Shown here piece by piece: positions 28,284 to 62,839 of a stretch of 64,000 nucleotides of DNA. The stretch lies in sequence record LR756501.1; one strand, written 5' to 3'. The notes under the pieces were generated by a model. It had not been told where the DNA came from, did no database searches, and was given only the letters and a program-made list of their open reading frames with translations. Position numbers and translations under genes: made by a program. The number at the start of each line of letters is the position of its first letter. Position 1 is the stretch's first letter.

Positions 28284-29456
28284 TTAGTCATGGTCTACGT
28301 AATTGTAATATTGAAAGCTTTTAGCCTTATAATCTATATTTAAAGCGTCTGGTGTTAATAATTGGTTAGTATCTCTATTGAAATATTTGAAAGTGTCCAT
28401 GAAAGGATTATTTTGAGGTACACCGTAATCTCTTTTTACAGTTACTCTCTTCACACCGTTACGGTCTCTTACCCAAGGACCTATCATATTATTCTTTTTA
28501 CAATATTCTACCATCTTTAGTTCACTTGTATTATCNNNNNNNNNNNNNNNNNNNNNGTAAACAGTACCGTCATCTAATTTCCAAATAAGCACTCTAGCCA
28601 TTAACATACCTTTATCGTCTGTTAATATTCCCATAGCACATTTATCTGGATTCTCACAGTAAATATCAAATCTTTTTTGTGATCTACTTGATCTCATACA
28701 AGAACCCCCAAGTGATCCTTGATGTCCGGTTTCACCTTTTCCGTAGGTGGTACCAAGGTACCATTTTCTTATATCTTCACCCACAACCACTTTTAAATTG
28801 TCCTCAACATTCTTTATTATTTTTTCCCATAATAATTTAAATTGTGGAATAAGTGCATCTATGTCTTTATCAGTTAGATCTGGGTCCAATTTTCTAAAGA
28901 ACTTACCAATTTTCATAGTTTGTCTAAAACCAGCTTTATAAGGATCTACAGCTTTATTTTTAATTTCTGATTTAAATTTGGATACAGGCACAAAAGAAAC
29001 TAAATCGCTTTTTTCCATATCAACATTAACGAAGCAAATATCAATATATTTTTTCTTAATTTTGAACTTCAATTCAGCTAGAATGTCTTTAATAAATTTA
29101 CTACAATCGAATTCAACTAAATTTCCTCTTAGAAAATCTTTAGCTTCTTCGGGTGTAATTTTTATAAGACTTCTACCTTGACTTTTTGTGATAGTGAATG
29201 TATCAGTATGTCTGTACTTATGATAAGGCATCCAGTTATAATCCCTTAATTTATTTTCTGGATCATCTGGTTTTTGTACTTTAAGAGTGTAGAAAGTAAT
29301 TTTATCAACGTCTGTAATTGTTTCAACTATAGCAAGTTTACCGTTAAGTTGTTGAATGCCACGGAAATTCTTATCACAGATAACGTAGTCGCCTTCTTTT
29401 ATCTCTTCCTTTTTAACAGCTTCATTTAAAACTAAAAACTCATCATATTTGATCAT
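28284..29456 (-). CDS. SCM-GRALVW-MDRIY family paralog 2 (contains the N-gap)
   Basis: MIKYDEFLVLNEA; GSCMR, ARVLIWK, NPFMDTF. Confidence 0.75.
   Translation of the reverse strand: MIKYDEFLVLNEAVKKEEIKEGDYVICDKNFRGIQQLNGKLAIVETITDVDKITFYTLKVQKPDDPENKLRDYNWMPYHKYRHTDTFTITKSQGRSLIKITPEEAKDFLRGNLVEFDCSKFIKDILAELKFKIKKKYIDICFVNVDMEKSDLVSFVPVSKFKSEIKNKAVDPYKAGFRQTMKIGKFFRKLDPDLTDKDIDALIPQFKLLWEKIIKNVEDNLKVVVGEDIRKWYLGTTYGKGETGHQGSLGGSCMRSSRSQKRFDIYCENPDKCAMGILTDDKGMLMARVLIWKLDDGTVYXXXXXXXDNTSELKMVEYCKKNNMIGPWVRDRNGVKRVTVKRDYGVPQNNPFMDTFKYFNRDTNQLLTPDALNIDYKAKSFQYYNYVDHD
28536..28556. other. Assembly gap (21 N)
   Basis: N-run; in frame, replaces the expected MDRxY segment. Confidence 0.95.
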
Positions 29457-36028: not shown

Positions 36029-37099
36029 TTAATCGTGATCTACATATTCCCAATACTCCCCAGCTTTAAAATTTCTAAACCTATTAGTTAAATAGTTACC
36101 AGTTGTGATAAAAAATTTAAACGTGTCCATAAAAGGATTTTCGTGTGGAGTACCGTAATCCCTACCCATATTGACTCTTAGAAGTATTCCTTTCTTATCT
36201 ACCTCAGCCTTGGTTAAAAACCCTTTCTTCTTGGCGTAGTCTAAAAATAATTTCTCAATAAAATCTTCAGTACAATAAATTCTATCCATGTATATCACAC
36301 CTTTTGGCTCGTCTAGTTTCCATAACAAGGCTCTACCTAACAATTTACCCATTGGATTTAATATGTACAATAGTTTAACTTTTTCAGGATTTTCAGTATA
36401 AATTGGTAATCTTCTTTGTGAACGAGCGTGTTTCATACAAGACTGGTGTAACGAACCACCGCCTTCGGCGTAAAACATTTCAAGGTACCATTTAGCCATA
36501 TCAATATCTTTTGCTATTTTAAATCTACCAAAATCGTCTTTATTAAGATTAAATGAGAATTTATAATCGTTGATATAATCTTCTATTATCATATCAGTAT
36601 CGTTAATAACTTTCTTTAGAAATCTTCCTACTCTAATGTTTTGTCGCATTGTTGAAGTCCAAGGATCTTCACCTTTATCTAATCTATTAAAGTTGGCAGC
36701 ACTTAGACAAGATACCGTATCATTTCTTTGTGTTACATCTATATAGGATACGTCACAATAAAATATTTTTTCGTAATCTATTAAAAATTTTAGACTATAA
36801 GATATGACGTCTCTGAATTTTCTGGAATATATTAAAGGTATATTATCATCTACTTTATTATTATTGAATAAATCTGTCCATTTTGCGTCTCTTATGAACC
36901 AACCGTTGTTATTATTTATTTCACCAGCTAAATCGTGTAATTTATCATTAAATCTATTTAAGAATTGTACACCGCTCTTTTTTAATACCCCTATATGGTT
37001 ATGTGTCTTCAAATCGTCAATGTCCCCATTAACAACCACAAGGTCGCCAATTTTTGGAGCCACGACAGATTCTTCAAATAGTTTATAGGATAACATCAT
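36029..37099 (-). CDS. SCM-GRALVW-MDRIY family paralog 4
   Basis: MMLSYKLFEES; QSCMK, GRALLWK, YMDRIY, NPFMDTF. Confidence 0.75.
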   Translation of the reverse strand: MMLSYKLFEESVVAPKIGDLVVVNGDIDDLKTHNHIGVLKKSGVQFLNRFNDKLHDLAGEINNNNGWFIRDAKWTDLFNNNKVDDNIPLIYSRKFRDVISYSLKFLIDYEKIFYCDVSYIDVTQRNDTVSCLSAANFNRLDKGEDPWTSTMRQNIRVGRFLKKVINDTDMIIEDYINDYKFSFNLNKDDFGRFKIAKDIDMAKWYLEMFYAEGGGSLHQSCMKHARSQRRLPIYTENPEKVKLLYILNPMGKLLGRALLWKLDEPKGVIYMDRIYCTEDFIEKLFLDYAKKKGFLTKAEVDKKGILLRVNMGRDYGTPHENPFMDTFKFFITTGNYLTNRFRNFKAGEYWEYVDHD

Positions 37100-49043: not shown

Positions 49044-49352
49044 TTAAACCCATGAATTTCGATCAGTCCAACGATTTTTATATGGGTTTGATTTAGTTTC
49101 ATATTTTTTGCTTGGTAAATCATCGTCCCAATTTTCTTCACCGTAAGGGTCAAGTTCTTTCATTCTGTCCTTTTTAATGTTCATCTTCTTGAGTTCCTTT
49201 CTGGCTCTATATGTAACAGAGTAGTCTGATAGTTCTCTTAATTTTTCAAGTATATAAACCCTATCTTTATCTGAAAGATTATGCCAATCATCTTTAGATA
49301 ATTTCATAGATTTAATTTTTCTTAATTCGTATAAATATTCTTGGTCCGTCAT
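49044..49352 (-). CDS. Tagged hypothetical protein
   Basis: ELDPYGEENW near C-terminus; ATGA overlap at 49352. Confidence 0.7.
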   Translation of the reverse strand: MTDQEYLYELRKIKSMKLSKDDWHNLSDKDRVYILEKLRELSDYSVTYRARKELKKMNIKKDRMKELDPYGEENWDDDLPSKKYETKSNPYKNRWTDRNSWV

Positions 49353-49858
49353 ACGTTGTCCTCCCATAATTCTTCACCGTAAGGGTCAGCCTCACTAAAA
49401 ATTTGTTTACCTTTATTGATTGGTTGTATTCTAGCTGCTTCCATATGTGGGAAATGATCCTCTAGTAGAGATACTCTCATTAATTCCATATCAGTATCAA
49501 TGTGATGATAAACAGTGTTTTCACTGGTTAAAATTGAGAGACCGTCGTTTCTCATTATATCTATCAATGGTCTGTTATCGTGTATTAAACACGTCTCGTC
49601 AAATTGAAAAAATGGATCACCATCTATTCTTGAAAATCCCAAAAATCTTATCCAATTTTTGTGGCTATCGTCTGTGAAATCGTGTTTATTTATTATTGCA
49701 CCAGCATCTAATTCTTTACCTATGTAAACCCAACAAGGACCTGATATACCACCTACTTTTTCACGTATTCCAAAATATCCCATTTGTTCTCTTAAACAAG
49801 ATCTTAAAGCTGATTCTAATTGAACAGGTCTTGTTCTTATTTTAAATATTAAAGGCAT
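49349..49858 (-). CDS. Tagged hypothetical protein
   Basis: Ends QIFSEADPYGEELWEDNV. Confidence 0.7.
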   Translation of the reverse strand: MPLIFKIRTRPVQLESALRSCLREQMGYFGIREKVGGISGPCWVYIGKELDAGAIINKHDFTDDSHKNWIRFLGFSRIDGDPFFQFDETCLIHDNRPLIDIMRNDGLSILTSENTVYHHIDTDMELMRVSLLEDHFPHMEAARIQPINKGKQIFSEADPYGEELWEDNV

Positions 49859-49861
49859 AAT

Positions 49862-50431
49862 TTATTCCTCCCAATTTTCTTCACCGTAAGGATCAACAGC
49901 ACAAAACTTTTGTCCCTTTGGTTCTTGTTTTTTTGATATTTGTTTTTCTAAAAACATTAAATCTTCATTGATATGATTTCTCATTCCAATCAAAGCTACT
50001 CTATAATCTCTATGTGTCTTATATCTACCTTTAGTGATGAAAAAATAACCATCTAATTCTCCTCTTGATTTATCTACATTTTCATCCAGTGTCCATATTC
50101 TTCTTCTACATCTAGTAAATCTTTCAGCGGTGTAATCATCCATATTTGGTGCCCATTGCCCATTATAATGTCTAGATACATGATCCAACCTATGTACCAT
50201 AGCGGTTATATTGTTATGTATGGTTCTGTAAGTAGATTTAATATCTTCTATTTCGATCACTATACCATTACCAAGAATTCCCCTAGTAAGATATATAGGA
50301 AATACTCTCATTTTTATTAAATTCCATAATTCAGTACATGTTTTTACAATTATGGCAATAATAACTTTCCAACCTTCTAATGTAAATAAGAGTCTGAATA
50401 TATTACTCAACGTATGGAATACCGCTTTCAT
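49862..50431 (-). CDS. Tagged hypothetical protein with hydrophobic N-terminus
   Basis: Ends KFCAVDPYGEENWEE. Confidence 0.7.
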   Translation of the reverse strand: MKAVFHTLSNIFRLLFTLEGWKVIIAIIVKTCTELWNLIKMRVFPIYLTRGILGNGIVIEIEDIKSTYRTIHNNITAMVHRLDHVSRHYNGQWAPNMDDYTAERFTRCRRRIWTLDENVDKSRGELDGYFFITKGRYKTHRDYRVALIGMRNHINEDLMFLEKQISKKQEPKGQKFCAVDPYGEENWEE

Positions 50432-50732
50432 TTAAAGAATCTAAATAATTGTTATGACCTAATTGAATTTTATCGTAAATTTCGTCTCTGAATTTCACCT
50501 TAACTTCTCTATCTGGATAGTACTCAGCAGTTTCTCTTAATTTTGAACCACTCGGTATAGCTATTAAATCATCATCCATCACGTAAGAACCTTCACCATC
50601 AAACCAGGGAAAATCCATAAGTAACTCGTGTTGGGCTAATAACATAGGATGATATACGTTGCCTTCGAACATTCCTGGTCCCTCTAGACAAACCCACCAT
50701 CTATTTTGTATTTTAGATATCGTGTATCTCAT
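50403..50732 (-). CDS. Hypothetical protein (untagged)
   Basis: In-operon ORF. Confidence 0.6.
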   Translation of the reverse strand: MRYTISKIQNRWWVCLEGPGMFEGNVYHPMLLAQHELLMDFPWFDGEGSYVMDDDLIAIPSGSKLRETAEYYPDREVKVKFRDEIYDKIQLGHNNYLDSLNESGIPYVE

Positions 50733-50735
50733 AAT

Positions 50736-51158
50736 CTACTCCTTCCAATTTTCCTCACCGTAAGGATCTAATTCACTAAAAACCTGACCCTGCGGATCGT
50801 TGTTTTCATATCTTATTTGAGCAGCAACCATCTCAATTCTTAAAGTGTTCATAACACCTTTTTGTCTATCATACATAACATCTATAACAATTCCATGATT
50901 ATCAATAAGATCTGGTGGATTATTTGTAGCGTCACATATTATTTTATAGTTATAAAGGAAGTTAGTAACTTGTAGTTCTTTAAAGATTGGGTCTAATCTC
51001 ATTATAATTTCAGCACGTGTATCTGGTGTGTTGAAACGCATCCACATGTTTTCTAAAGCGTCTTCAATGCTTTTTCTAATTTGAATGAATGCTCTACGTA
51101 CATTTAAGTCGTCGAGTGTTCTTGTGTCTTCATTTATTATCCAAGGACTATTATTCAT
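50736..51158 (-). CDS. Stand-alone tail-sheath C-terminal-domain-like protein plus tag
   Basis: LNVRRAFI...FNTPDTR...YKIICDATNNPPDLIDN; ends DPYGEENWKE. Confidence 0.7.
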   Translation of the reverse strand: MNNSPWIINEDTRTLDDLNVRRAFIQIRKSIEDALENMWMRFNTPDTRAEIIMRLDPIFKELQVTNFLYNYKIICDATNNPPDLIDNHGIVIDVMYDRQKGVMNTLRIEMVAAQIRYENNDPQGQVFSELDPYGEENWKE

Positions 51159-51495
51159 TATCCCACCTTTCTTCACCGTAAGGATCTAATTCACTAAATA
51201 CTTGTTGATAACCGCCTTTAGGGTCATGTCCGTGTAATCCTCTAAAATCACCTTCACAATCAAACCAACCAACATCAGGACGATAACTCCATAACTCACT
51301 AGCCATAGATTTCCCTTGTAATTTTGTTTTAACTCCTTTGTGTTCAATCCACATAGCGTTACCTTGTGAATCTGATTGTAAAACTTTATGGTTATCTGTC
51401 GCATTAATAGTATTACTTAGTTGGAAACTACTTGGGTTTGGTAATCCGTAGCAACTATTAATAACTATTTTATCCCACATTTTATTTATATTCAT
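51151..51495 (-). CDS. Mosaic mini-protein: PolB motif-B-like and fibre-like segments plus tag
   Basis: KIVINSCYG; KVLQSDSQGNAMW; DPYGEERW. Confidence 0.5.
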   Translation of the reverse strand: MNINKMWDKIVINSCYGLPNPSSFQLSNTINATDNHKVLQSDSQGNAMWIEHKGVKTKLQGKSMASELWSYRPDVGWFDCEGDFRGLHGHDPKGGYQQVFSELDPYGEERWDNE

Positions 51496-51881
51496 TACCA
51501 GTTCTCCTCTCCGTATGGATCTAATTCACTAAATCTTTGTTCACCTTTTGTTTGTTGGTTTTGTTTCCACATAGACATTCCAACATTATCTTTTAAATAA
51601 TCTGGAAGTTTTTCGAACGCTTCTCTCATATATTTTTGTCCTGATTCTGTAACTCCTAGTCCTCTTGCGTGATCGTAATAATTAGTGGACCAATGGTTTA
51701 TTAATCCTAATTTATCCCATTTCTCAATAGCATCTCTACGTATTTTCCTGAGAGTTTCTTTATCAATAGAATTTTCGTATTCTTTTACAAGTTCTAGTTC
51801 TCTCTTAGCAATACTATCAAAGCTCTCCATTTTCATGAGATCGTCTTGTAATTCTTTTAATTGTTCTTTGGTCATCGCCAT
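51495..51881 (-). CDS. Mosaic mini-protein: capsid-N-terminal-like and terminase-like segments plus tag
   Basis: IEKWDKLGL; ARGLGVTE; EAFEKLPDYLK; DPYGEENW. Confidence 0.45.
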   Translation of the reverse strand: MAMTKEQLKELQDDLMKMESFDSIAKRELELVKEYENSIDKETLRKIRRDAIEKWDKLGLINHWSTNYYDHARGLGVTESGQKYMREAFEKLPDYLKDNVGMSMWKQNQQTKGEQRFSELDPYGEENW

Positions 51882-52237
51882 TAATTCCTCCAATCTTCCT
51901 CACCGTAAGGGTCTAAATCACTAACTACTCTAGTTATTTCAGTCTTTCTGATACCTCTACCTATTGACTGTTTTTCGTATAAACTATCTGGTTTACCAAA
52001 CACGTCAAAAAATTCTTTCGAAGAATTGATGAACACAGGTTTATTTTTAGGTCCACCTTTAGGTTCACTAAGGAATTCGTTTCCAATTAATACTGATTTT
52101 ACTTCTCTTGTTTCTGGAAACTCCACAGGCGTAAAGTCAGCACCAATGGGTGTTGACGTAACAATCACTTTACCCTTATGTGGTGTTAATTTGGGCAAAG
52201 CTGAGTTCCACATTTTTCTATAAGTAGAAATATCCAT
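51881..52237 (-). CDS. Mosaic mini-protein: terminase-like and sheath-N-terminal-like segments plus tag
   Basis: WNSALPKL..KVIVTSTPIG; GGPKNKPVFINSSKEFFDVFGKP; DPYGEEDW. Confidence 0.55.
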   Translation of the reverse strand: MDISTYRKMWNSALPKLTPHKGKVIVTSTPIGADFTPVEFPETREVKSVLIGNEFLSEPKGGPKNKPVFINSSKEFFDVFGKPDSLYEKQSIGRGIRKTEITRVVSDLDPYGEEDWRN

Positions 52238-52454
52238 CTATATGATTTCCTCCAACCGTGTAATCTTCATTACACTCTAAACATTTATATTCAGTAGTAC
52301 TATCATTTTTATCAGGATTTGTATTTACACCGTTCTTATCGTAAATAGGTGGATAATAAACAGCGTGACTAACACTCATGCCTGATGTTCTTGTCGTAGG
52401 TACTTGGCAATGTGGACATATTGGCACACTACCTGTTAATTCAACTTTCTTCAT
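52218..52454 (-). CDS. Zn-ribbon hypothetical protein (untagged)
   Basis: CPHC...CLEC. Confidence 0.65.
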   Translation of the reverse strand: MKKVELTGSVPICPHCQVPTTRTSGMSVSHAVYYPPIYDKNGVNTNPDKNDSTTEYKCLECNEDYTVGGNHIDGYFYL

Positions 52455-52713
52455 ACCAATTCTCCTCTCCGTAAGGATCAATTTTTCTTATCCCTCTTAC
52501 TTTTTCTGGGTTATCAATAAAATCATTAAGTTTCTTTTCTAACTCAACAATTTTTTCTTGTAATTCTTTAATTTTAGTTTCATCTGCTGGTGCTCCCTGT
52601 GGGCCCATGGGTCCTTCTGTTATATAATTCGTGCTTGTTGTATATCTGGTTGCACCGCCAGGTGTGTGAATTTCATAACTATATTCCCAAGGAGGGTATG
52701 GTATGCTAGGCAT
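52441..52713 (-). CDS. Mini-protein with collagen-like triplets, coiled coil and tag
   Basis: GPMGPQGAP; DPYGEENW. Confidence 0.65.
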   Translation of the reverse strand: MPSIPYPPWEYSYEIHTPGGATRYTTSTNYITEGPMGPQGAPADETKIKELQEKIVELEKKLNDFIDNPEKVRGIRKIDPYGEENWYEES

Positions 52714-52731
52714 TGTTTTTTATATTAAAAA

Positions 52732-52974
52732 TTATTCATTCCAATTTTCTTCACCGTAAGGATCTAACTCTGTATAGACTCTTTTAATTTCAGTATAAAC
52801 AAAAGATTCACCTGGATTATAACCCCCGCCTCCTCCATATAAGTGAACCATTTCATTTGGATTCTGTCCCCCCATACCAAGATACCCGTTACTATTTACA
52901 TACATTCTAGCTGCAGTAAAACCCGGATCTGGTCTGAGGTCATAAGTTACCAAATTAAACGGTGGACTCTTCAT
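52732..52974 (-). CDS. Mini-protein with tail-fibre-like repeat plus tag
   Basis: RMYVNSNGYLGMGGQNPNEMVHLYG; KRVYTELDPYGEENW. Confidence 0.6.
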   Translation of the reverse strand: MKSPPFNLVTYDLRPDPGFTAARMYVNSNGYLGMGGQNPNEMVHLYGGGGGYNPGESFVYTEIKRVYTELDPYGEENWNE

Positions 52975-53107
52975 CTTCTTCTGAAACTTCTTTTGGCTCT
53001 ACGTAATTCTCTTCGTCTGGTAAAGCGTTCCTTTGTTCCCTCTGCCAAGCAAAAGCTAATATTAATAAAAATGCAATCAATCCTAAAATAAGAAAAAATA
53101 CTATCAT
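52955..53107 (-). CDS. 50-aa single-TM protein (not in ORF track)
   Basis: MIVFFLILGLIAFLLILAFAW + acidic tail; GGAGG upstream. Confidence 0.65.
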   Translation of the reverse strand: MIVFFLILGLIAFLLILAFAWQREQRNALPDEENYVEPKEVSEEDEESTV

Positions 53108-53130
53108 AATGTGTCCTCCGTTTTTAGTTT

Positions 53131-53331
53131 TTATAAATCGTGTCTGTTATATTCATTGTAAATAATAGTCAACATCATGTTACCATGAGTTTCTTCATGT
53201 GATTGTGTTACACTTATTATCTTTTGTCCAAGTTTATTTGATCTTTGCTCTTCAAACCATTTATTCACTTCATTTCCAACATTTTTTGGAGCACCAGTGA
53301 ATACTTTACATTTCATAAAAGTCTCATCCAT
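53131..53331 (-). CDS. Hypothetical protein
   Basis: In-operon ORF. Confidence 0.6.
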   Translation of the reverse strand: MDETFMKCKVFTGAPKNVGNEVNKWFEEQRSNKLGQKIISVTQSHEETHGNMMLTIIYNEYNRHDL

Positions 53332-53332
53332 A

Positions 53333-53821
53333 TTATTTATTTAATTTTTTAATTTCTTGTAATATATTATAATAAAAATCTTTCAAATTATAAGCGATCT
53401 TCATATCAGGTCTAGCCAATCTAGTCTGTATTTCAACATCATCTCTTCTCTCGTACTGATTATCAATACCAACGATTATTTTCTTTTTGCGTCCAGTTAT
53501 AAATTTACCGTATTCAAACAGTACTATTGGATTTAATGATCCGTTAGCAAACCAGAAAGCAATAATATCTGACTCTTTTAACTTTTTATATTCCCACGCT
53601 ATTTGTCTCTCGGCCTCTTCTTTTACATCCATAGGAAAAACTGCTCTTCTAGGACTAAAAACTATAACGTCACATAAATAATCGTGAGTTTTACTTTCAC
53701 TATCAACGAACAATTTCTCAATTATTTCAGACTGCCAATCAGCACAGTTAGTAATACCACCACCTAGGAATAATTTAATAGGTGATTTTATTTCTTCTGG
53801 GGCTATTATAAACTGTATCAT
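53333..53821 (-). CDS. Nucleoside 2-deoxyribosyltransferase-like protein
   Basis: LFLGGGI..DWQ, SPRR, QIAWE, DIIAFWF, PIVLFEYG. Confidence 0.75.
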   Translation of the reverse strand: MIQFIIAPEEIKSPIKLFLGGGITNCADWQSEIIEKLFVDSESKTHDYLCDVIVFSPRRAVFPMDVKEEAERQIAWEYKKLKESDIIAFWFANGSLNPIVLFEYGKFITGRKKKIIVGIDNQYERRDDVEIQTRLARPDMKIAYNLKDFYYNILQEIKKLNK

Positions 53822-53835
53822 TTTTAATCCTTATT

Positions 53836-57405: not shown

Positions 57406-58836
57406 CTAGTTCTCCCAATTTTCTTCACCATAAGGATCTAAAGACTTGCGTTTATGATACTCCTCTGGGTTGGTTTCAAGTAATTTTAATTTATCTCTCA
57501 ATACATTATTCTCTTTCGTCGATTTATTAGATAATTCTAAATAGTGTATGAGTTCTTTTTGTATTTCATTCTTTTCATTTATAACTCTTCTTAAAGCCTC
57601 TTTAGTCTTCTTTAAATCTTCAACGATATAGTTTTTATTTTCTTCTATTTCTCTAGCTCTTCTTTCAAAGTAATCTTTATGAAACTTTGCTTCCTTGGTC
57701 CATTCGTCTTCCTTCACCCATTCTTTAGGCTCTTCTTGCCACCAATTACTATCTGGAATGTTCCATCTTTTCTTCTTTTGCTCGGATTCTAACTTATCTC
57801 TATAATCAGCGTATTTCTTCTTATTGAGCAACCATTCGTCCTCAGTTAAAGTGGGTGGAGCGTAAGCACGAGCGTTTTCCCAAGTTCTTCCTTCTTCGTA
57901 TAATTTACTATTATCCCTTTGAAAATCTTCGTACTTCTTCTTCTTCTCTTTCCACTCTTGATCATTCAATACTTTTATTTCACCATCATCACCTTTTTCG
58001 ATAGGAAGAATAGGATTTAGTGGTGCACCAGGAGGATTAAAACCTCTTTTTTTCATCACTTCGTTCCACTCTTTGTCTGTATAATGATCGTATTTATTTT
58101 TTAGTATATCATTATATTTTTTCCTACTATCCAGTAGATGCGGATCTTGATCCAATTTCCATAAAGGAATTTCTTGCTGTTCTGTATCTACACTTAATTT
58201 AATACCTTTTGGATATTTATGTTGAGATACCTGCCACGAGTAAGGTTTATATCCCTGCTCTTCTTCGTAAAATTTATCGTCTCTTCTATCTGGGTTGTTT
58301 CTGTTATATTCTGTTTGTTCAACAAATTCTCTATATCTCCTTTTATTTTCCTCGGGACTATCAGATGGAACGTAAATACCACTACTGAAATCTTCCTTTG
58401 GTTTTTGTACACTGGTGATAACAGGTTTTCTTAATTTCCTAGATATTTCTTTAATTTCGTCTAAATTTAATTCTTTACCGTCAACGTAATATTTATTTTC
58501 TTTCCTTGTAACTTTAGGATTCTGCAAAGAAAAATGAGTCTTACTCGAATGGACTTTATCACCGTTTTCATGCCATGCCTCTGATACTGGAACAAAAGGT
58601 TCTAATTTAGAAACTTCTTTCTCATATTCTTTATGTTCTTTTGCTACATCTTTTATAGACACAAATGGTTTCTTCGCTTGATTTTCTTTTGATGCCAATT
58701 CGTCTAAATCCTTCATGATCTCATCAGAACTAACAGGTTTAGAAGAAGAAACATCTTTATTTAAATGTAACGTTTCTTGCCACCATCTTACACCAGTCTC
58801 ATTTGGATCGTATTCACCGTCTTTATTTCTTGCCAT
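57406..58836 (-). CDS. Large charged low-complexity protein plus tag
   Basis: E/K/W-rich, coiled-coil C-terminus; LDPYGEENWEN. Confidence 0.75.
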   Translation of the reverse strand: MARNKDGEYDPNETGVRWWQETLHLNKDVSSSKPVSSDEIMKDLDELASKENQAKKPFVSIKDVAKEHKEYEKEVSKLEPFVPVSEAWHENGDKVHSSKTHFSLQNPKVTRKENKYYVDGKELNLDEIKEISRKLRKPVITSVQKPKEDFSSGIYVPSDSPEENKRRYREFVEQTEYNRNNPDRRDDKFYEEEQGYKPYSWQVSQHKYPKGIKLSVDTEQQEIPLWKLDQDPHLLDSRKKYNDILKNKYDHYTDKEWNEVMKKRGFNPPGAPLNPILPIEKGDDGEIKVLNDQEWKEKKKKYEDFQRDNSKLYEEGRTWENARAYAPPTLTEDEWLLNKKKYADYRDKLESEQKKKRWNIPDSNWWQEEPKEWVKEDEWTKEAKFHKDYFERRAREIEENKNYIVEDLKKTKEALRRVINEKNEIQKELIHYLELSNKSTKENNVLRDKLKLLETNPEEYHKRKSLDPYGEENWEN

Positions 58837-59350
58837 CACTTATATCTTTAATCTTCTTAACAATCTCAGCCTGTATAGTTTTAGTCAATTCATCTACCAT
58901 CATCTGTTCAAACTCTTTCATATGCTCTTCATACGTTTTCTTTTTCGTAGACTCTGGTGAGTTTGGAAAAGTCTTAGGTAAACTTATATCAATATCGTAA
59001 AATGCGCCCAACTCTACCAATTTTTTCCAATCATTCTCAGAAATAGAATGCCTGTATCTCTGTACGTAAAATACACACATTGAATTAGTTATCATTCCAT
59101 TTTCTAGAAGATAATCATTATTATTATTATCATCTTCATGTCCGCAATCAGTTGTGTGCCAACCCATCCAACCGTCTTCTTTGAAGAATTCTGGTTCGTC
59201 TATTTCTGAATAGTTTGCTGATCCACATTTAGCGTGATCTAATGCGTATTGCATCAACATTGTTAATTCGTCGTTGATAGGATCTCTTAACTTTTCTTCT
59301 TTCTTAGGTTCCATATATAGAAGAAACCTAGACGTATCATTTCTGTGCAT
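58823..59350 (-). CDS. Hypothetical protein
   Basis: Long ORF; C-terminal EFEQMMVDELTKTIQAEIV helix. Confidence 0.7.
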   Translation of the reverse strand: MHRNDTSRFLLYMEPKKEEKLRDPINDELTMLMQYALDHAKCGSANYSEIDEPEFFKEDGWMGWHTTDCGHEDDNNNNDYLLENGMITNSMCVFYVQRYRHSISENDWKKLVELGAFYDIDISLPKTFPNSPESTKKKTYEEHMKEFEQMMVDELTKTIQAEIVKKIKDISDGKK

Positions 59351-61937: not shown

Positions 61938-62273
61938 ATGTTATATAATGATTTTTATCAAGATCCACAAGACCCAAATACTAATTTACGTCCGTCAATG
62001 AGCGAATATAATTGGAATAAATGGCAACCAGTAATCGATTTTATTGGAATTACAGACACAGAAAAAAGAAACTGGTTGACTCAATATTTACAAAATTTAG
62101 AGGATAACGGTAATACAATTGATATACCAAAGAAATCAGCTTCGGACGCTAAACTAGATATTTTAGAAAGTGTTATCAGAATTTCAAATACCTCTAAAGT
62201 TAAAAACACTAATATAGAATTTAGTAACGATGATAACCTAGAGACAAGCAAAATCACAATTACAATAGAATGA
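61938..62273 (+). CDS. Protein with gp23 N-terminal-like segment
   Basis: NKWQPVIDFIGITDTEKRNWLTQYLQN. Confidence 0.5.
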   Translation: MLYNDFYQDPQDPNTNLRPSMSEYNWNKWQPVIDFIGITDTEKRNWLTQYLQNLEDNGNTIDIPKKSASDAKLDILESVIRISNTSKVKNTNIEFSNDDNLETSKITITIE

Positions 62274-62839
62274 CGGAAGTAACTGAAAATAGGGCTTATG
62301 TGAGAATAGATGCTGAAAAAGCTTTATCTAAGTGGGAGCCTATTATAAATGCTTTAAATGTATCTGATCCCGATATAAAAAGGATCATGGCAGATTACGC
62401 TGAGCACGACGGTACTATTGAAATTGGAGATAGAACTTTAGAACAAAAGCTTTATAGTTTATTACCAGTTTCTTTAAAGGTATTATCACAGTTAAATTTA
62501 AAGAATAAGAAAGTTGTTTTAGTGGACTCTACATATTGGATGAATAAAAATAGAACTGATTTAATAGATAAGATGTTAGATGAAGTAGATCCAATGAATG
62601 AACACAAGAAACAAATTAAAATAAATATTGATAGTGATCTATTGGTCACAATAGGAACTGAAAAGACTATAGATCATTGTGAATCAGCGTTAATGAATCA
62701 ATTAATCGTTATGATAAATAAAGAATTAGAAAATGGCACTACATTATATTTAACAAAAATGATTAGTTCTATCGATATTGAGCCAAATAGTTTTGGACCT
62801 AATAAAATGGTAATGACTTCTTATTATAACGTAGAATAA
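62270..62839 (+). CDS. Protein with gp23 N-terminal-like segment
   Basis: SKWEPIINALNVSD..KRIMADYAEH..LLPVSLKV. Confidence 0.5.
   Translation: MTEVTENRAYVRIDAEKALSKWEPIINALNVSDPDIKRIMADYAEHDGTIEIGDRTLEQKLYSLLPVSLKVLSQLNLKNKKVVLVDSTYWMNKNRTDLIDKMLDEVDPMNEHKKQIKINIDSDLLVTIGTEKTIDHCESALMNQLIVMINKELENGTTLYLTKMISSIDIEPNSFGPNKMVMTSYYNVE

What the first reader, a model, noticed from the sequence alone, without database searches (positions are those of the whole stretch)
51495..52237. Two adjacent mini-ORFs carry successive pieces of a terminase ATPase
51495-51881 has ARGLGVTE followed directly by MREAFEKLPDYLK; from memory these resemble T4 gp17 SRQLGKTT (Walker A) and KQAIELLPDFLQ, with the intervening region missing. 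51881-52237 starts KMWNSALPKL..KVIVTSTPIG, resembling the gp17 coupling-motif region (..AIQPVISSG..KIIITTTPNG). Both pieces are fused to unrelated segments and tagged.
Basis: inference. Interest (0 to 1): 0.72.

Follow-up and report, generated by a model that had tools for sequence, protein, structure and literature searches.

The report
Tagged mosaic mini-proteins of a megaphage
Two small neighbouring genes of a 735-kb phage belong to a family of about 90 proteins that share an eight-residue tag (DPYGEExW): one is a patchwork holding a piece of the phage's own tail sheath and possibly a terminase piece, and the other has no real terminase similarity.

Summary
The window is part of LR756501.1, a 735,411-bp uncultured phage. 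Both ORFs exist on the minus strand and the quoted strings are there. Each ends in DPYGEExW.

This tag occurs 22 times in the window (0.02 expected) and about 105 times in about 90 of about 1,022 genes. It also recurs in many related IMG/VR contigs.

**Terminase reading**
- ORF A fails. There is no Pfam, PHROG, PDB or clade-HMM match, and hhalign gives 0.1% probability in the wrong region. The "Walker A" string is lost in the 76%-identical orthologue. The stretch is a fast-evolving module shared with another tagged protein.
- ORF B is only suggestive. Residues 7-35 align to the correct TerL motif-III segment (hhalign P about 1e-4), but this is no better than the best chance windows genome-wide.

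**What is solid**
- B residues 44-90 copy the N-terminal part of the phage's own 1,285-aa tail sheath.
- Neighbour ORF C carries the sheath C-terminal domain.
- Another neighbour carries a major-capsid-protein piece.

Genome-wide, about 20 small ORFs, roughly half of them tagged, are diverged fragments of portal, prohead protease, capsid protein and sheath. A, C and the capsid-fragment ORF are under purifying selection. B is truncated in relatives.

I read the tag as a docking or targeting motif, most like T4's capsid-targeting sequence. This reading is unproven.

The parts
51495..51881 (-). ORF A, 128 aa from ATG (132 aa if the TTG at 51893 is used). It has a conserved helical N-terminal half, a fast-evolving linker module and a C-terminal DPYGEENW tag.
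   Evidence: The orthologue is 76-81% identical, with dN/dS 0.28. AF2 predicts it all-helical at low confidence (pLDDT 47.6).
51555..51668 (-). The 'TerL-like' stretch of ORF A (residues 72-109, ARGLGVTE...LPDYLK...WKQNQ). It is a linker module, not a terminase piece.
   Evidence: The indels and most substitutions between orthologues fall here. The module GQxxMRxxxxxLPDYLKxN is shared with tagged protein P0005. hhalign against TerL gives probability 0.1%. Smith-Waterman null 1.6%.
51498..51521 (-). DPYGEENW tag of ORF A; W is the last residue.
51881..52237 (-). ORF B, 118 aa, a mosaic orphan: a possible TerL motif-III piece, a sheath N-terminal piece and a tag.
   Evidence: No homologue of the full protein among 5.8 billion proteins. 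AF2 pLDDT 33.
52133..52219 (-). ORF B residues 7-35 (RKMWNSALPKL..KVIVTSTPIGADF), a possible copy of the TerL strand plus motif III.
   Evidence: The best Smith-Waterman hit among 1,022 genes is TerL2. hhalign hits the correct region with P of 1e-3 to 1e-4, but the null maxima are 28.4 and 29.6 against 29.9. Clade HMM E=34. No TerL among tblastn hits in 50,697 phage records.
51968..52108 (-). ORF B residues 44-90, a diverged copy (45-49% identity) of residues 28-73 of the genome's own 1,285-aa tail sheath.
   Evidence: blastp E=8e-5. Smith-Waterman score 83 against a next best of 51 among 1,022 genes; 0 of 2,000 shuffles reach it. phrog_23 tail sheath matches the corresponding N-terminal profile positions, E=0.039.
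51890..51913 (-). DPYGEEDW tag of ORF B. Its last codons (…TGGAGGAAT) also provide a GGAGGA just upstream of ORF A's ATG.
51987..53833 (.). A block of about 1.85 kb present here but absent from two related contigs. It holds ORF B residues 1-83 and six more small ORFs, two of them tagged. The relatives keep only the last 35 codons of B, without a usable start.
   Evidence: blastn and translation of L041; IMG/VR relative L178 matches only B residues 81-118
50736..51176 (-). ORF C, 146 aa: tail-sheath C-terminal domain (residues 20-108, 40% identical to sheath residues 1174-1262) plus tag.
   Evidence: PF17482 E=9e-8, above the cut-off. phrog_23 E=1.6e-14. blastp E=8e-15. dN/dS 0.10. Matches the sheath C-terminal domain in 1,996 phage records at <=33% identity.
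49349..49858 (-). Tagged ORF of 169 aa whose residues 2-85 copy residues 165-244 of the gp23-like major capsid protein.
   Evidence: blastp E=4e-17; dN/dS 0.20; parent protein identified
49044..52974 (-). Operon-like array of ten tightly packed small ORFs, nine of which carry the tag: 49044-49367, 49349-49858, 49862-50431, 50736-51176, 51151-51495, A, B, 52441-52713, 52732-52974.
   Evidence: no excess of promoter-like sites inside the array

Best explanation
ORFs A and B are two members of a large gene family, specific to this phage clade, of small modular proteins defined by one short linear motif, DPYGEExW. In about 38 cases the motif sits at the extreme C-terminus, in about 20 close to the N-terminus, and otherwise in internal linkers, with up to four copies per protein.

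The family is assembled by shuffling short modules. A substantial subset carries diverged fragments (35-65% identity) of the phage's own core morphogenesis proteins.

- **ORF B** is such a patchwork. A sheath N-terminal fragment is shown. It is preceded by about 30 residues that may derive from the TerL motif-III strand (odds about 40%). It is followed by a tag stem that relatives also keep.
- **ORF A** is not terminase-derived. It has a conserved helical domain, a variable linker module and the tag.

**Shown:** the tag family, the sheath, capsid, portal and protease fragments, purifying selection on A and C, and the dispensability of B.

**Inferred:** the tag is a docking or targeting peptide that brings many unrelated cargoes to one common partner. 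My preferred partner is the T4-type prohead scaffolding core, so that tagged proteins are loaded into the very large capsid as T4 internal proteins are loaded by their capsid-targeting sequence. On this view fragments of head proteins were recruited because they already fit that environment.
For: **Tag statistics**
- 22 matches in the window against 0.02 expected.
- 109 in the genome against 0 for the reversed control.
- 105 peptide occurrences in 90 of about 1,022 genes, with D-P-Y-G-E-E invariant and W in 99 of 105.
- All synonymous codons are used, so the constraint is on the peptide.
- The same motif, with the same three positional classes, occurs in 149 copies on related IMG/VR contigs.
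- It is at chance level (72 single hits) in 185,579 prokaryote genomes.

**Fragments**
- Masked-tag blastp links tagged ORFs to portal, prohead protease, gp23-like capsid protein and sheath.
- The same fragment types occur in tagged ORFs of relatives.

**Selection:** dN/dS is 0.28 (A), 0.10 (C) and 0.20 (capsid-fragment ORF).

**Support for the capsid-core reading**
- The head genes are T4-type (Portal_T4, Peptidase_S77, Gp23).
- A second conserved signal, the N-terminal MIKKFKLFE, is found in 17 genes, 11 of which also carry the tag (hypergeometric 1e-8).
- That signal resembles T4's CTS MKTYQEFIAE in place, length and its hydrophobic-x-E end (PMC8442874).
- Tagged paralogues of the protease domain and of its scaffold-like repeats exist.
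Against: - No partner of the tag has been identified, and no proteomic or structural evidence exists.
- Sheath fragments (B, C) have no obvious business inside a capsid.
- Some tagged proteins are cytoplasmic-type enzymes: CCA-adding enzyme, tRNA methyltransferase, dCMP deaminase, GNAT, phosphoribosyltransferase. These fit a cytoplasmic hub as well as, or better than, encapsidation.
- The capsid protein, portal and protease themselves lack the tag, so it is not the general maturation-cleavage site.
- About half of the core-gene fragments are untagged, so fragmentation and tagging are separable.
- B has no orthologue and is truncated in relatives, so it may have no function at all.
Confidence: 0.6

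Rival explanations
1. A and B carry successive pieces of the terminase ATPase (Walker A with the following helix, then the coupling motif), kept as tagged mimics. For example, they could act as decoys for terminase-sensing immune receptors or as binders of the small terminase.
For: - B residues 7-35 align to the right TerL segment with hhalign P of 1e-3 to 1e-4, and TerL2 is the best Smith-Waterman hit of 1,022 genes.
- A residues 83-113 rank TerL1 second of 1,022.
- Other tagged ORFs demonstrably carry pieces of portal, capsid protein, protease and sheath, so a TerL piece would fit the pattern.
- Core virion proteins are known targets of bacterial STAND sensors (PMC13581612).
Against: - A fails every profile test, and the resemblance decays in its orthologue.
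- 'ARGLGVTE' lacks the GK[TS] of a P-loop.
- B's score is matched by unrelated windows.
- B comes before A in transcription, so the pieces are not successive.
- A occurs without B in relatives.
- Pieces of 30-40 residues cannot reproduce the folded ATPase surface that Avs-type sensors recognise (established knowledge).
- No tagged ORF in 149 related copies shows a TerL fragment at E<1e-3.
Confidence: 0.07
2. ORF B, and perhaps other mosaics, is functionless recombination debris. It would be a chance open frame made by illegitimate joining of gene scraps in a hyperplastic region, kept open only because it is short and translationally coupled to its neighbours.
For: - B is an orphan among 5.8 billion proteins.
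- Its first 83 codons lie in a 1.85-kb block missing from relatives, which keep only a start-less 35-codon remnant.
- AF2 gives no fold (pLDDT 33).
- It joins three unrelated pieces within 118 residues.
- Tag-coding DNA of different genes cross-matches at 83-90% over 28-54 nt, which gives recombination handles.
Against: - The frame is intact with a GGAGGA upstream and an ATG start.
- The tag is perfectly preserved.
- The neighbouring mosaics of the same kind (C and the capsid-fragment ORF) are under clear purifying selection and are conserved in relatives.
Confidence: 0.25
3. The tag docks its bearers to a cytoplasmic hub rather than the capsid. Candidates are a replication, translation or tRNA-repair factory, a phage compartment, or a protease or unfoldase (tag as a timed degron). 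The structural-protein fragments would act as caps or baits that hold assembly interfaces of sheath, capsid or portal until they are removed.
For: - Tagged enzymes are of cytoplasmic type: CCA-adding enzyme, tRNA methyltransferase, deaminase, GNAT.
- B and C together cover the N- and C-terminal halves of the sheath inner domain but lack both terminal arms: sheath residues 28-73 and 1174-1262 of 1,285. From general knowledge of sheath structures, this is what a polymerisation cap would look like.
- The acidic-aromatic motif in charged, probably disordered flanks is typical of hub-binding linear motifs.
Against: - There is no candidate hub.
- The B+C complex prediction gave no answer.
- C occurs without B in relatives.
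- The association with the CTS-like N-terminal motif points to the head.
Confidence: 0.25

Closest known systems
T4 internal proteins (IPI-III, Alt) with the N-terminal capsid-targeting sequence MKTYQEFIAE
   Same: A short conserved peptide is attached to otherwise unrelated, fast-evolving, often small proteins encoded in hyperplastic clusters of a phage with gp20/gp21/gp23-type head genes. A CTS-like N-terminal motif (MIKKFKLFE) co-occurs with the tag here (PMC3012670, PMC8442874).
   Different: The DPYGEExW motif is unrelated in sequence. It sits at the C-terminus, at the N-terminus or internally, is sometimes repeated, and is on about 9% of all genes, including cytoplasmic-type enzymes and sheath fragments. 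Encapsidation and cleavage are untested.
Encapsulin cargo-loading peptides
   Same: A C-terminal tag of about 10 residues on diverse cargo proteins directs them to the interior of an HK97-fold shell (established knowledge).
   Different: Different sequence, and the host is a phage. The tag is also N-terminal and internal. No shell binding has been shown.
Hub-binding short linear motifs of replication proteins (SSB acidic C-terminal tip, clamp-binding motifs)
   Same: An acidic-aromatic peptide at a flexible terminus is shared by many unrelated proteins (established knowledge; flanks).
   Different: No sequence match to those motifs, and the hub is unknown. The number of bearers (about 90) is far larger.
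Large terminase ATPase (T4 gp17, Pfam Terminase_6N)
   Same: B has K-V-I-V-T-S-T-P-x-G, like the motif-III strand KIIITSTPDG of this genome's TerL and KIIITTTPNG of gp17.
   Different: There is no P-loop, no Walker B and no fold, and at most 30 residues are alignable. A has no significant similarity at all.
Orphan cassettes of polymorphic toxin loci (Rhs DPxGL, CdiA VENN junction motifs)
   Same: Arrays of small modules share a short conserved junction peptide whose DNA can serve as a recombination handle (one search shows tag-to-tag DNA matches).
   Different: Here the conserved peptide ends the module instead of preceding a variable toxin tip. There is no toxin or immunity pair and no large recipient gene.

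Membership tests
Large terminase ATPase (Terminase_6N / T4 gp17 type) | Match to a curated family profile above threshold | tested here: not met
   No terminase family for A or B in Pfam at E<=10 or PHROGs at E<=1. The genome's real TerL genes score 2e-14 and 2e-8.
Large terminase ATPase (Terminase_6N / T4 gp17 type) | Walker A P-loop G/S-x4-GK[TS] | tested here: not met
   A has ARGLGVTE, with no GK[TS]. The orthologue has ARGV-TGAG. If the stretch aligns at all, it aligns to the strand after Walker A (MANKGET..), not to SRQMGIT.
Large terminase ATPase (Terminase_6N / T4 gp17 type) | Motif III (coupling) strand h-h-h-h-T/S-S/T-T-P-x-G | tested here: inconclusive
   B has KVIVTSTPIG. hhalign finds the right region with P of 1e-3 to 1e-4, but chance windows reach 28.4 and 29.6 against 29.9.
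Large terminase ATPase (Terminase_6N / T4 gp17 type) | Similarity to this genome's own TerL beyond chance | tested here: not met
   Clade HMM with filters off: B E=34, A E=61. Smith-Waterman window null: 2.2% and 1.6%. A module against the TerL profile: probability 0.1%.
Contractile tail sheath (PF17482 / phrog_23), as a fragment | Significant similarity of ORF B's middle part to the sheath N-terminal region | tested here: met
   45-49% identity to sheath residues 28-73, E=8e-5. Smith-Waterman score 83 against a next best of 51. 0 of 2,000 shuffles reach it. phrog_23 matches the corresponding profile positions, E=0.039.
Contractile tail sheath (PF17482 / phrog_23), as a fragment | Complete sheath subunit able to polymerise | tested here: not met
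   B covers about 46 and C about 89 of 1,285 residues. Both lack the terminal arms.
DPYGEExW-tagged protein family (defined here) | Invariant D-P-Y-G-E-E-x-W in a charged flank at a terminus or in a linker | tested here: met
   A ends ..SELDPYGEENW and B ends ..SDLDPYGEEDWRN; family statistics
T4-type capsid-targeted internal proteins | Targeting peptide needed for encapsidation, cleavage by the prohead protease, presence in virions | not testable with these tools
   Only indirect evidence: T4-type head genes and a CTS-like MIKKFKLFE motif associated with the tag.

The most novel reading that the evidence does not exclude
The tagged mosaics are a purpose-built display library. Each would be a short, largely unfolded polypeptide presenting linear segments of the phage's most conserved virion proteins (capsid protein, portal, prohead protease, sheath, perhaps terminase). 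Through the common tag they would be coupled to one effector or location. They would serve as baits or decoys that intercept host pattern-recognition immunity, or that poison the assembly of competing related phages.
Probability: 0.1. Interest if true: 0.9.

Novelty: new variant of a known kind. Interest (0 to 1): 0.55.

Why it matters
The largest known phage genome devotes about 9% of its genes to proteins marked by one invariant eight-residue peptide. I found no paper describing this motif.

The genome also holds some twenty diverged scraps of its own portal, protease, capsid and sheath genes as separate small genes, several of them conserved and under selection. If the tag is a loading or docking signal, it gives a direct experimental handle on two questions: how huge phages organise or package large protein repertoires, and how new phage genes are built from pieces of old ones.

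For the specific claim examined here the lesson is more sober. Motif-level resemblance to terminase in 30-40-residue stretches is at or near chance level.

Tried and rejected
- **Curated libraries.** Pfam and PHROGs scans of A and B gave no terminase family.
- **PDB.** phmmer of B 1-45 and of A residues 60-116 gave no gp17.
- **Clade TerL HMM.** Built from 16 sequences and run with --max against all 4,668 ORFs, it ranked B 177th and A 339th.
- **Intermediate sequence.** P0005, which shares EIMRK and LPDYLK with TerL1 by eye, scores only 40 by Smith-Waterman. That is rank 19, with a 5% null.
- **ESM Atlas.** The feature search gave no usable hit for A or B.
- **Structure prediction.** AF2 gave B pLDDT 33 and A pLDDT 47.6. 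Both are too poor for fold searches, so none was run.
- **Complex prediction.** B 1-100 with C 1-128, testing the idea that they are complementary halves of the sheath inner domain, returned 'no answer'. It counts neither for nor against binding.
- **P0004.** This 779-aa repeat protein, found by the profile search with nine stretches, is a low-complexity tandem-repeat translation. I set it aside as spurious.
- **Maturation-cleavage site.** I considered the tag as a T4-type site and rejected it, because capsid protein, portal and protease lack it.
- **RBS or DNA-level signal.** I rejected this as the main constraint, because N-terminal and internal copies are equally conserved and all synonymous codons occur.
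- **Host motif.** I found no support for the tag being copied from cellular proteins. There are 72 single hits in 185,579 genomes, about the number I estimated for chance (about 70), and none is clustered.
- **Promoter and terminator scan.** The scan of the array showed nothing above shuffles.
- Not used.
- **Masked stretch.** The 21 N at window 28536-28556 were left untouched.
Full report
**Source and observation.** The window is bases 503061-567060 of LR756501.1, an unannotated 735,411-bp 'uncultured phage' record. I fetched the whole record. Its 735-kb length matches the largest genome reported in the huge-phage survey PMC7162821 (abstract).

The two ORFs are real and lie on the minus strand.
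- ORF A is 51495-51881 (128 aa from its ATG).
- ORF B is 51881-52237 (118 aa).
- B's stop overlaps A's start.

The quoted strings are present, with five residues between ARGLGVTE and MREAFEKLPDYLK. In transcription order B comes first, so the two 'pieces' are not successive in terminase order.

**The tag.** Both ORFs end in DPYGEExW.
- Its degenerate DNA pattern occurs 22 times in the window against 0.02 expected.
- It occurs 109 times in the genome against 0 for a reversed control.
- At protein level I count 105 copies in 90 of about 1,022 genes. D-P-Y-G-E-E is invariant and W is present in 99 of 105. The flanks are charged, with a weak K-R-V-F-S-x-L stem upstream and D/E/N downstream.
- About 38 copies sit 8-13 residues from the C-terminus, about 20 lie within the first 30 residues, and the rest are internal, with up to four per protein.
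- All synonymous codons are used, so the constraint is on the peptide.
- The same motif, in the same three positions, occurs in at least 149 copies on related IMG/VR contigs up to 243 kb long.
- In 185,579 prokaryote genomes it is at chance level: 72 single hits.
- No paper mentions it in a phage context.

**This genome's true terminase.** Terminase_6N matches two genes.
- TerL1 (record 699854-701026, 390 aa) has the P-loop SRQMGIT but no nuclease domain.
- TerL2 (record 609226-611493, 755 aa) starts with an intein C-terminal half, then continues exactly after the P-loop and carries the nuclease domain.
- A third ORF (record 623865-624410) encodes the matching N-extein, ending in SRQVG.
- The packaging terminase therefore looks like a split-intein gene, an arrangement kept in 14 relatives.

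**Testing the terminase claim: curated and simple searches.**
- Neither ORF hits any terminase family in the curated libraries, and neither hits gp17 in the PDB.
- By Smith-Waterman against all 1,022 genes, B 1-43 has TerL2 as its best hit (score 43 against a next best of 38). A 80-115 has TerL1 as its second-best hit.
- Real 43-residue windows of this genome reach those scores against TerL in 2.2% and 1.6% of cases.
- A TerL HMM built from the clade, run without filters on all 4,668 ORFs, gives B E=34 in the right region and A E=61 in the wrong region.

**Testing the terminase claim: ORF A.**
- A's orthologue (76-81% identical) has lost 'GLGVTE' and has two insertions in this stretch. TerL falls to rank 16 and 81.
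- The N-terminal half of A is almost invariant, while the 'TerL-like' half is the variable part.
- A profile search of 1.84 billion representatives finds only two other tagged small proteins, and no terminase. One shares the GQxxMRxxxxxLPDYLKxN module and the other shares the EKWxKLG..W..YD module.
- hhalign of that module against the TerL alignment gives probability 0.1% in the wrong region.
- I conclude that A is not terminase-derived.

**Testing the terminase claim: ORF B.**
- hhalign finds the correct segment (TerL2 246-275, the strand plus motif III) with P of 1e-3 to 1e-4.
- In 4,000 control windows the maximum is 28.4, from a window (…GRKVFLIQSG…) of an unrelated 331-aa gene (record 449143-450138). 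In related tagged ORFs a window containing the tag itself reaches 29.6. B scores 29.9.
- tblastn of B against 50,697 phage genomes finds no terminase.
- The TerL origin of B's first 35 residues is therefore possible, at about 40% in my judgement, but not demonstrated.

**What B really contains.**
- Residues 44-90 are 45-49% identical to residues 28-73 of the genome's own 1,285-aa tail sheath, record 596429-600286 (E=8e-5; Smith-Waterman score 83 against a next best of 51). The PHROG sheath profile gives a weak match at the matching position.
- Two ORFs downstream, ORF C (50736-51176) carries the sheath C-terminal domain above Pfam's threshold. It is 40% identical to sheath residues 1174-1262.
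- ORF 49349-49858 carries residues 165-244 of the gp23-like capsid protein (E=4e-17).

**The wider pattern.**
- With tags masked, tagged ORFs across the genome match portal, prohead protease (both the protease domain and its 14-residue repeats), capsid protein and sheath.
- A reciprocal search lists four portal, three protease, nine capsid and three sheath fragments in small ORFs. Roughly half are tagged, and some hold two non-adjacent pieces of the parent.
- Tagged ORFs of relatives carry the same kinds of fragment. These include orthologues of the protease-domain and portal fragments, and none has TerL at E<1e-3.
- Most other tagged proteins are orphans. A few are enzymes: CCA-adding enzyme, tRNA methyltransferase, dCMP deaminase, GNAT and phosphoribosyltransferase.

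**Are they genes?**
- Against the syntenic Logan contig, dN/dS is 0.28 for A, 0.10 for C, 0.20 for the capsid-fragment ORF, and 0.02-0.34 for the neighbours.
- B is different. It has no homologue among 5.8 billion proteins.
- The relatives lack a 1.85-kb block (window 51987-53833) that holds B's first 83 codons and six other ORFs. They keep only B's last 35 codons, without a start.
- B is thus dispensable and may be debris.
- Tag-coding DNA of different genes cross-matches at 83-90% identity, which offers handles for the shuffling.

**Mechanism.** The shared invariant peptide at flexible termini of about 90 unrelated proteins is best read as a docking or targeting motif for one common partner. 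I favour the T4-type prohead core for five reasons.
- The head genes are gp20/gp21/gp23-type.
- Head-protein paralogues dominate the fragments.
- The arrays resemble T4's hyperplastic internal-protein loci (PMC3012670).
- A second conserved signal, the N-terminal MIKKFKLFE, occurs in 17 genes, 11 of which carry the tag (P=1e-8).
- That signal resembles T4's capsid-targeting sequence MKTYQEFIAE (PMC8442874).

Three things count against this reading: the sheath fragments, the cytoplasmic-type enzymes among the bearers, and the lack of any identified partner. A cytoplasmic hub or degron remains a serious rival. Structure and complex predictions were uninformative.

**Verdict.** The terminase interpretation fails for A and is only suggestive for B. 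What is there is a member pair of a new, very large tagged family of modular mini-proteins, some of which are built from pieces of the phage's own virion genes.

Noticed in passing
outside the window: LR756501.1 623865-624410(-), 609226-611493(-), 699854-701026(-); loci L022, L023, L034: The packaging terminase looks like a split-intein gene. An N-extein ORF ending in the P-loop start (SRQVG) lies about 13 kb from a 755-aa ORF that begins with an intein C-half (PF14890), followed by the rest of the ATPase and the nuclease. This arrangement is kept in 14 IMG/VR relatives. A third gene is an ATPase-only TerL paralogue without a nuclease domain.
   Followed up: partly
genome-wide; in the window 36029-37099(-): A second conserved signal, the N-terminal M-I-K-K-F-K-L-F-E, occurs in 17 otherwise unrelated genes. 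11 of them also carry DPYGEExW (hypergeometric 1e-8). It resembles the T4 capsid-targeting sequence MKTYQEFIAE.
   Followed up: partly
window 58823-59350(-), 61938-62273(+), 62270-62839(+): Untagged small ORFs with weak to moderate similarity to pieces of the gp23-like capsid protein: residues 345-415 (E=0.02), 38-70 (E=0.002) and 30-77 (E=7e-5). Six of the nine capsid-protein fragments in the genome map at least partly to its first 160 residues.
   Followed up: partly
window 51987-53833 against L041 9828-9892: A 1.85-kb indel relative to two related contigs covers seven small ORFs, including a 162-aa ORF at 53333-53821. The relative retains a start-less remnant of ORF B's tag end.
   Followed up: yes
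window 51881-51900 and other array junctions: The last codons of the tag region often contain a GGAGGA-like purine run about 5-14 nt before the next gene's ATG (TAATG or ATGA overlaps). In arrays the tag end may therefore double as the ribosome-binding site of the following gene.
   Followed up: no
LR756501.1 44452-46983(-), 154863-158564(-), 282219-283655(+), 457823-459457(-): Large proteins (478-1,233 aa) carry two to four internal copies of the tag. One of them starts with MITKFKLFE. They could be multivalent scaffolds or polyproteins.
   Followed up: no
L063 429-746(+) (IMG/VR relative) and TerL2 residues about 198-205: The string NWNEKQ directly after a tag in a relative is identical to a hexapeptide (NWNEKQ) that is conserved in this clade's TerL and follows its LPFFLK helix. 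This gives a spurious hhalign score of 29.6 and serves as a caution for motif-level terminase calls.
   Followed up: partly
L186, L242, L250 (Bacteroidetes/Bacteroidales MAG contigs of about 3.3 kb): Three similar-sized short contigs binned into lake Bacteroidota MAGs each carry one tag match near position 2800. They may be mis-binned fragments of a related phage or a hint at the host.
   Followed up: no
window 28536-28556: A stretch of 21 N (masked); it was left untouched.
   Followed up: no
L041 13686-14627(-): The related Logan contig carries a 313-aa ORF with a faint LAGLIDADG hit next to the syntenic array.
   Followed up: no
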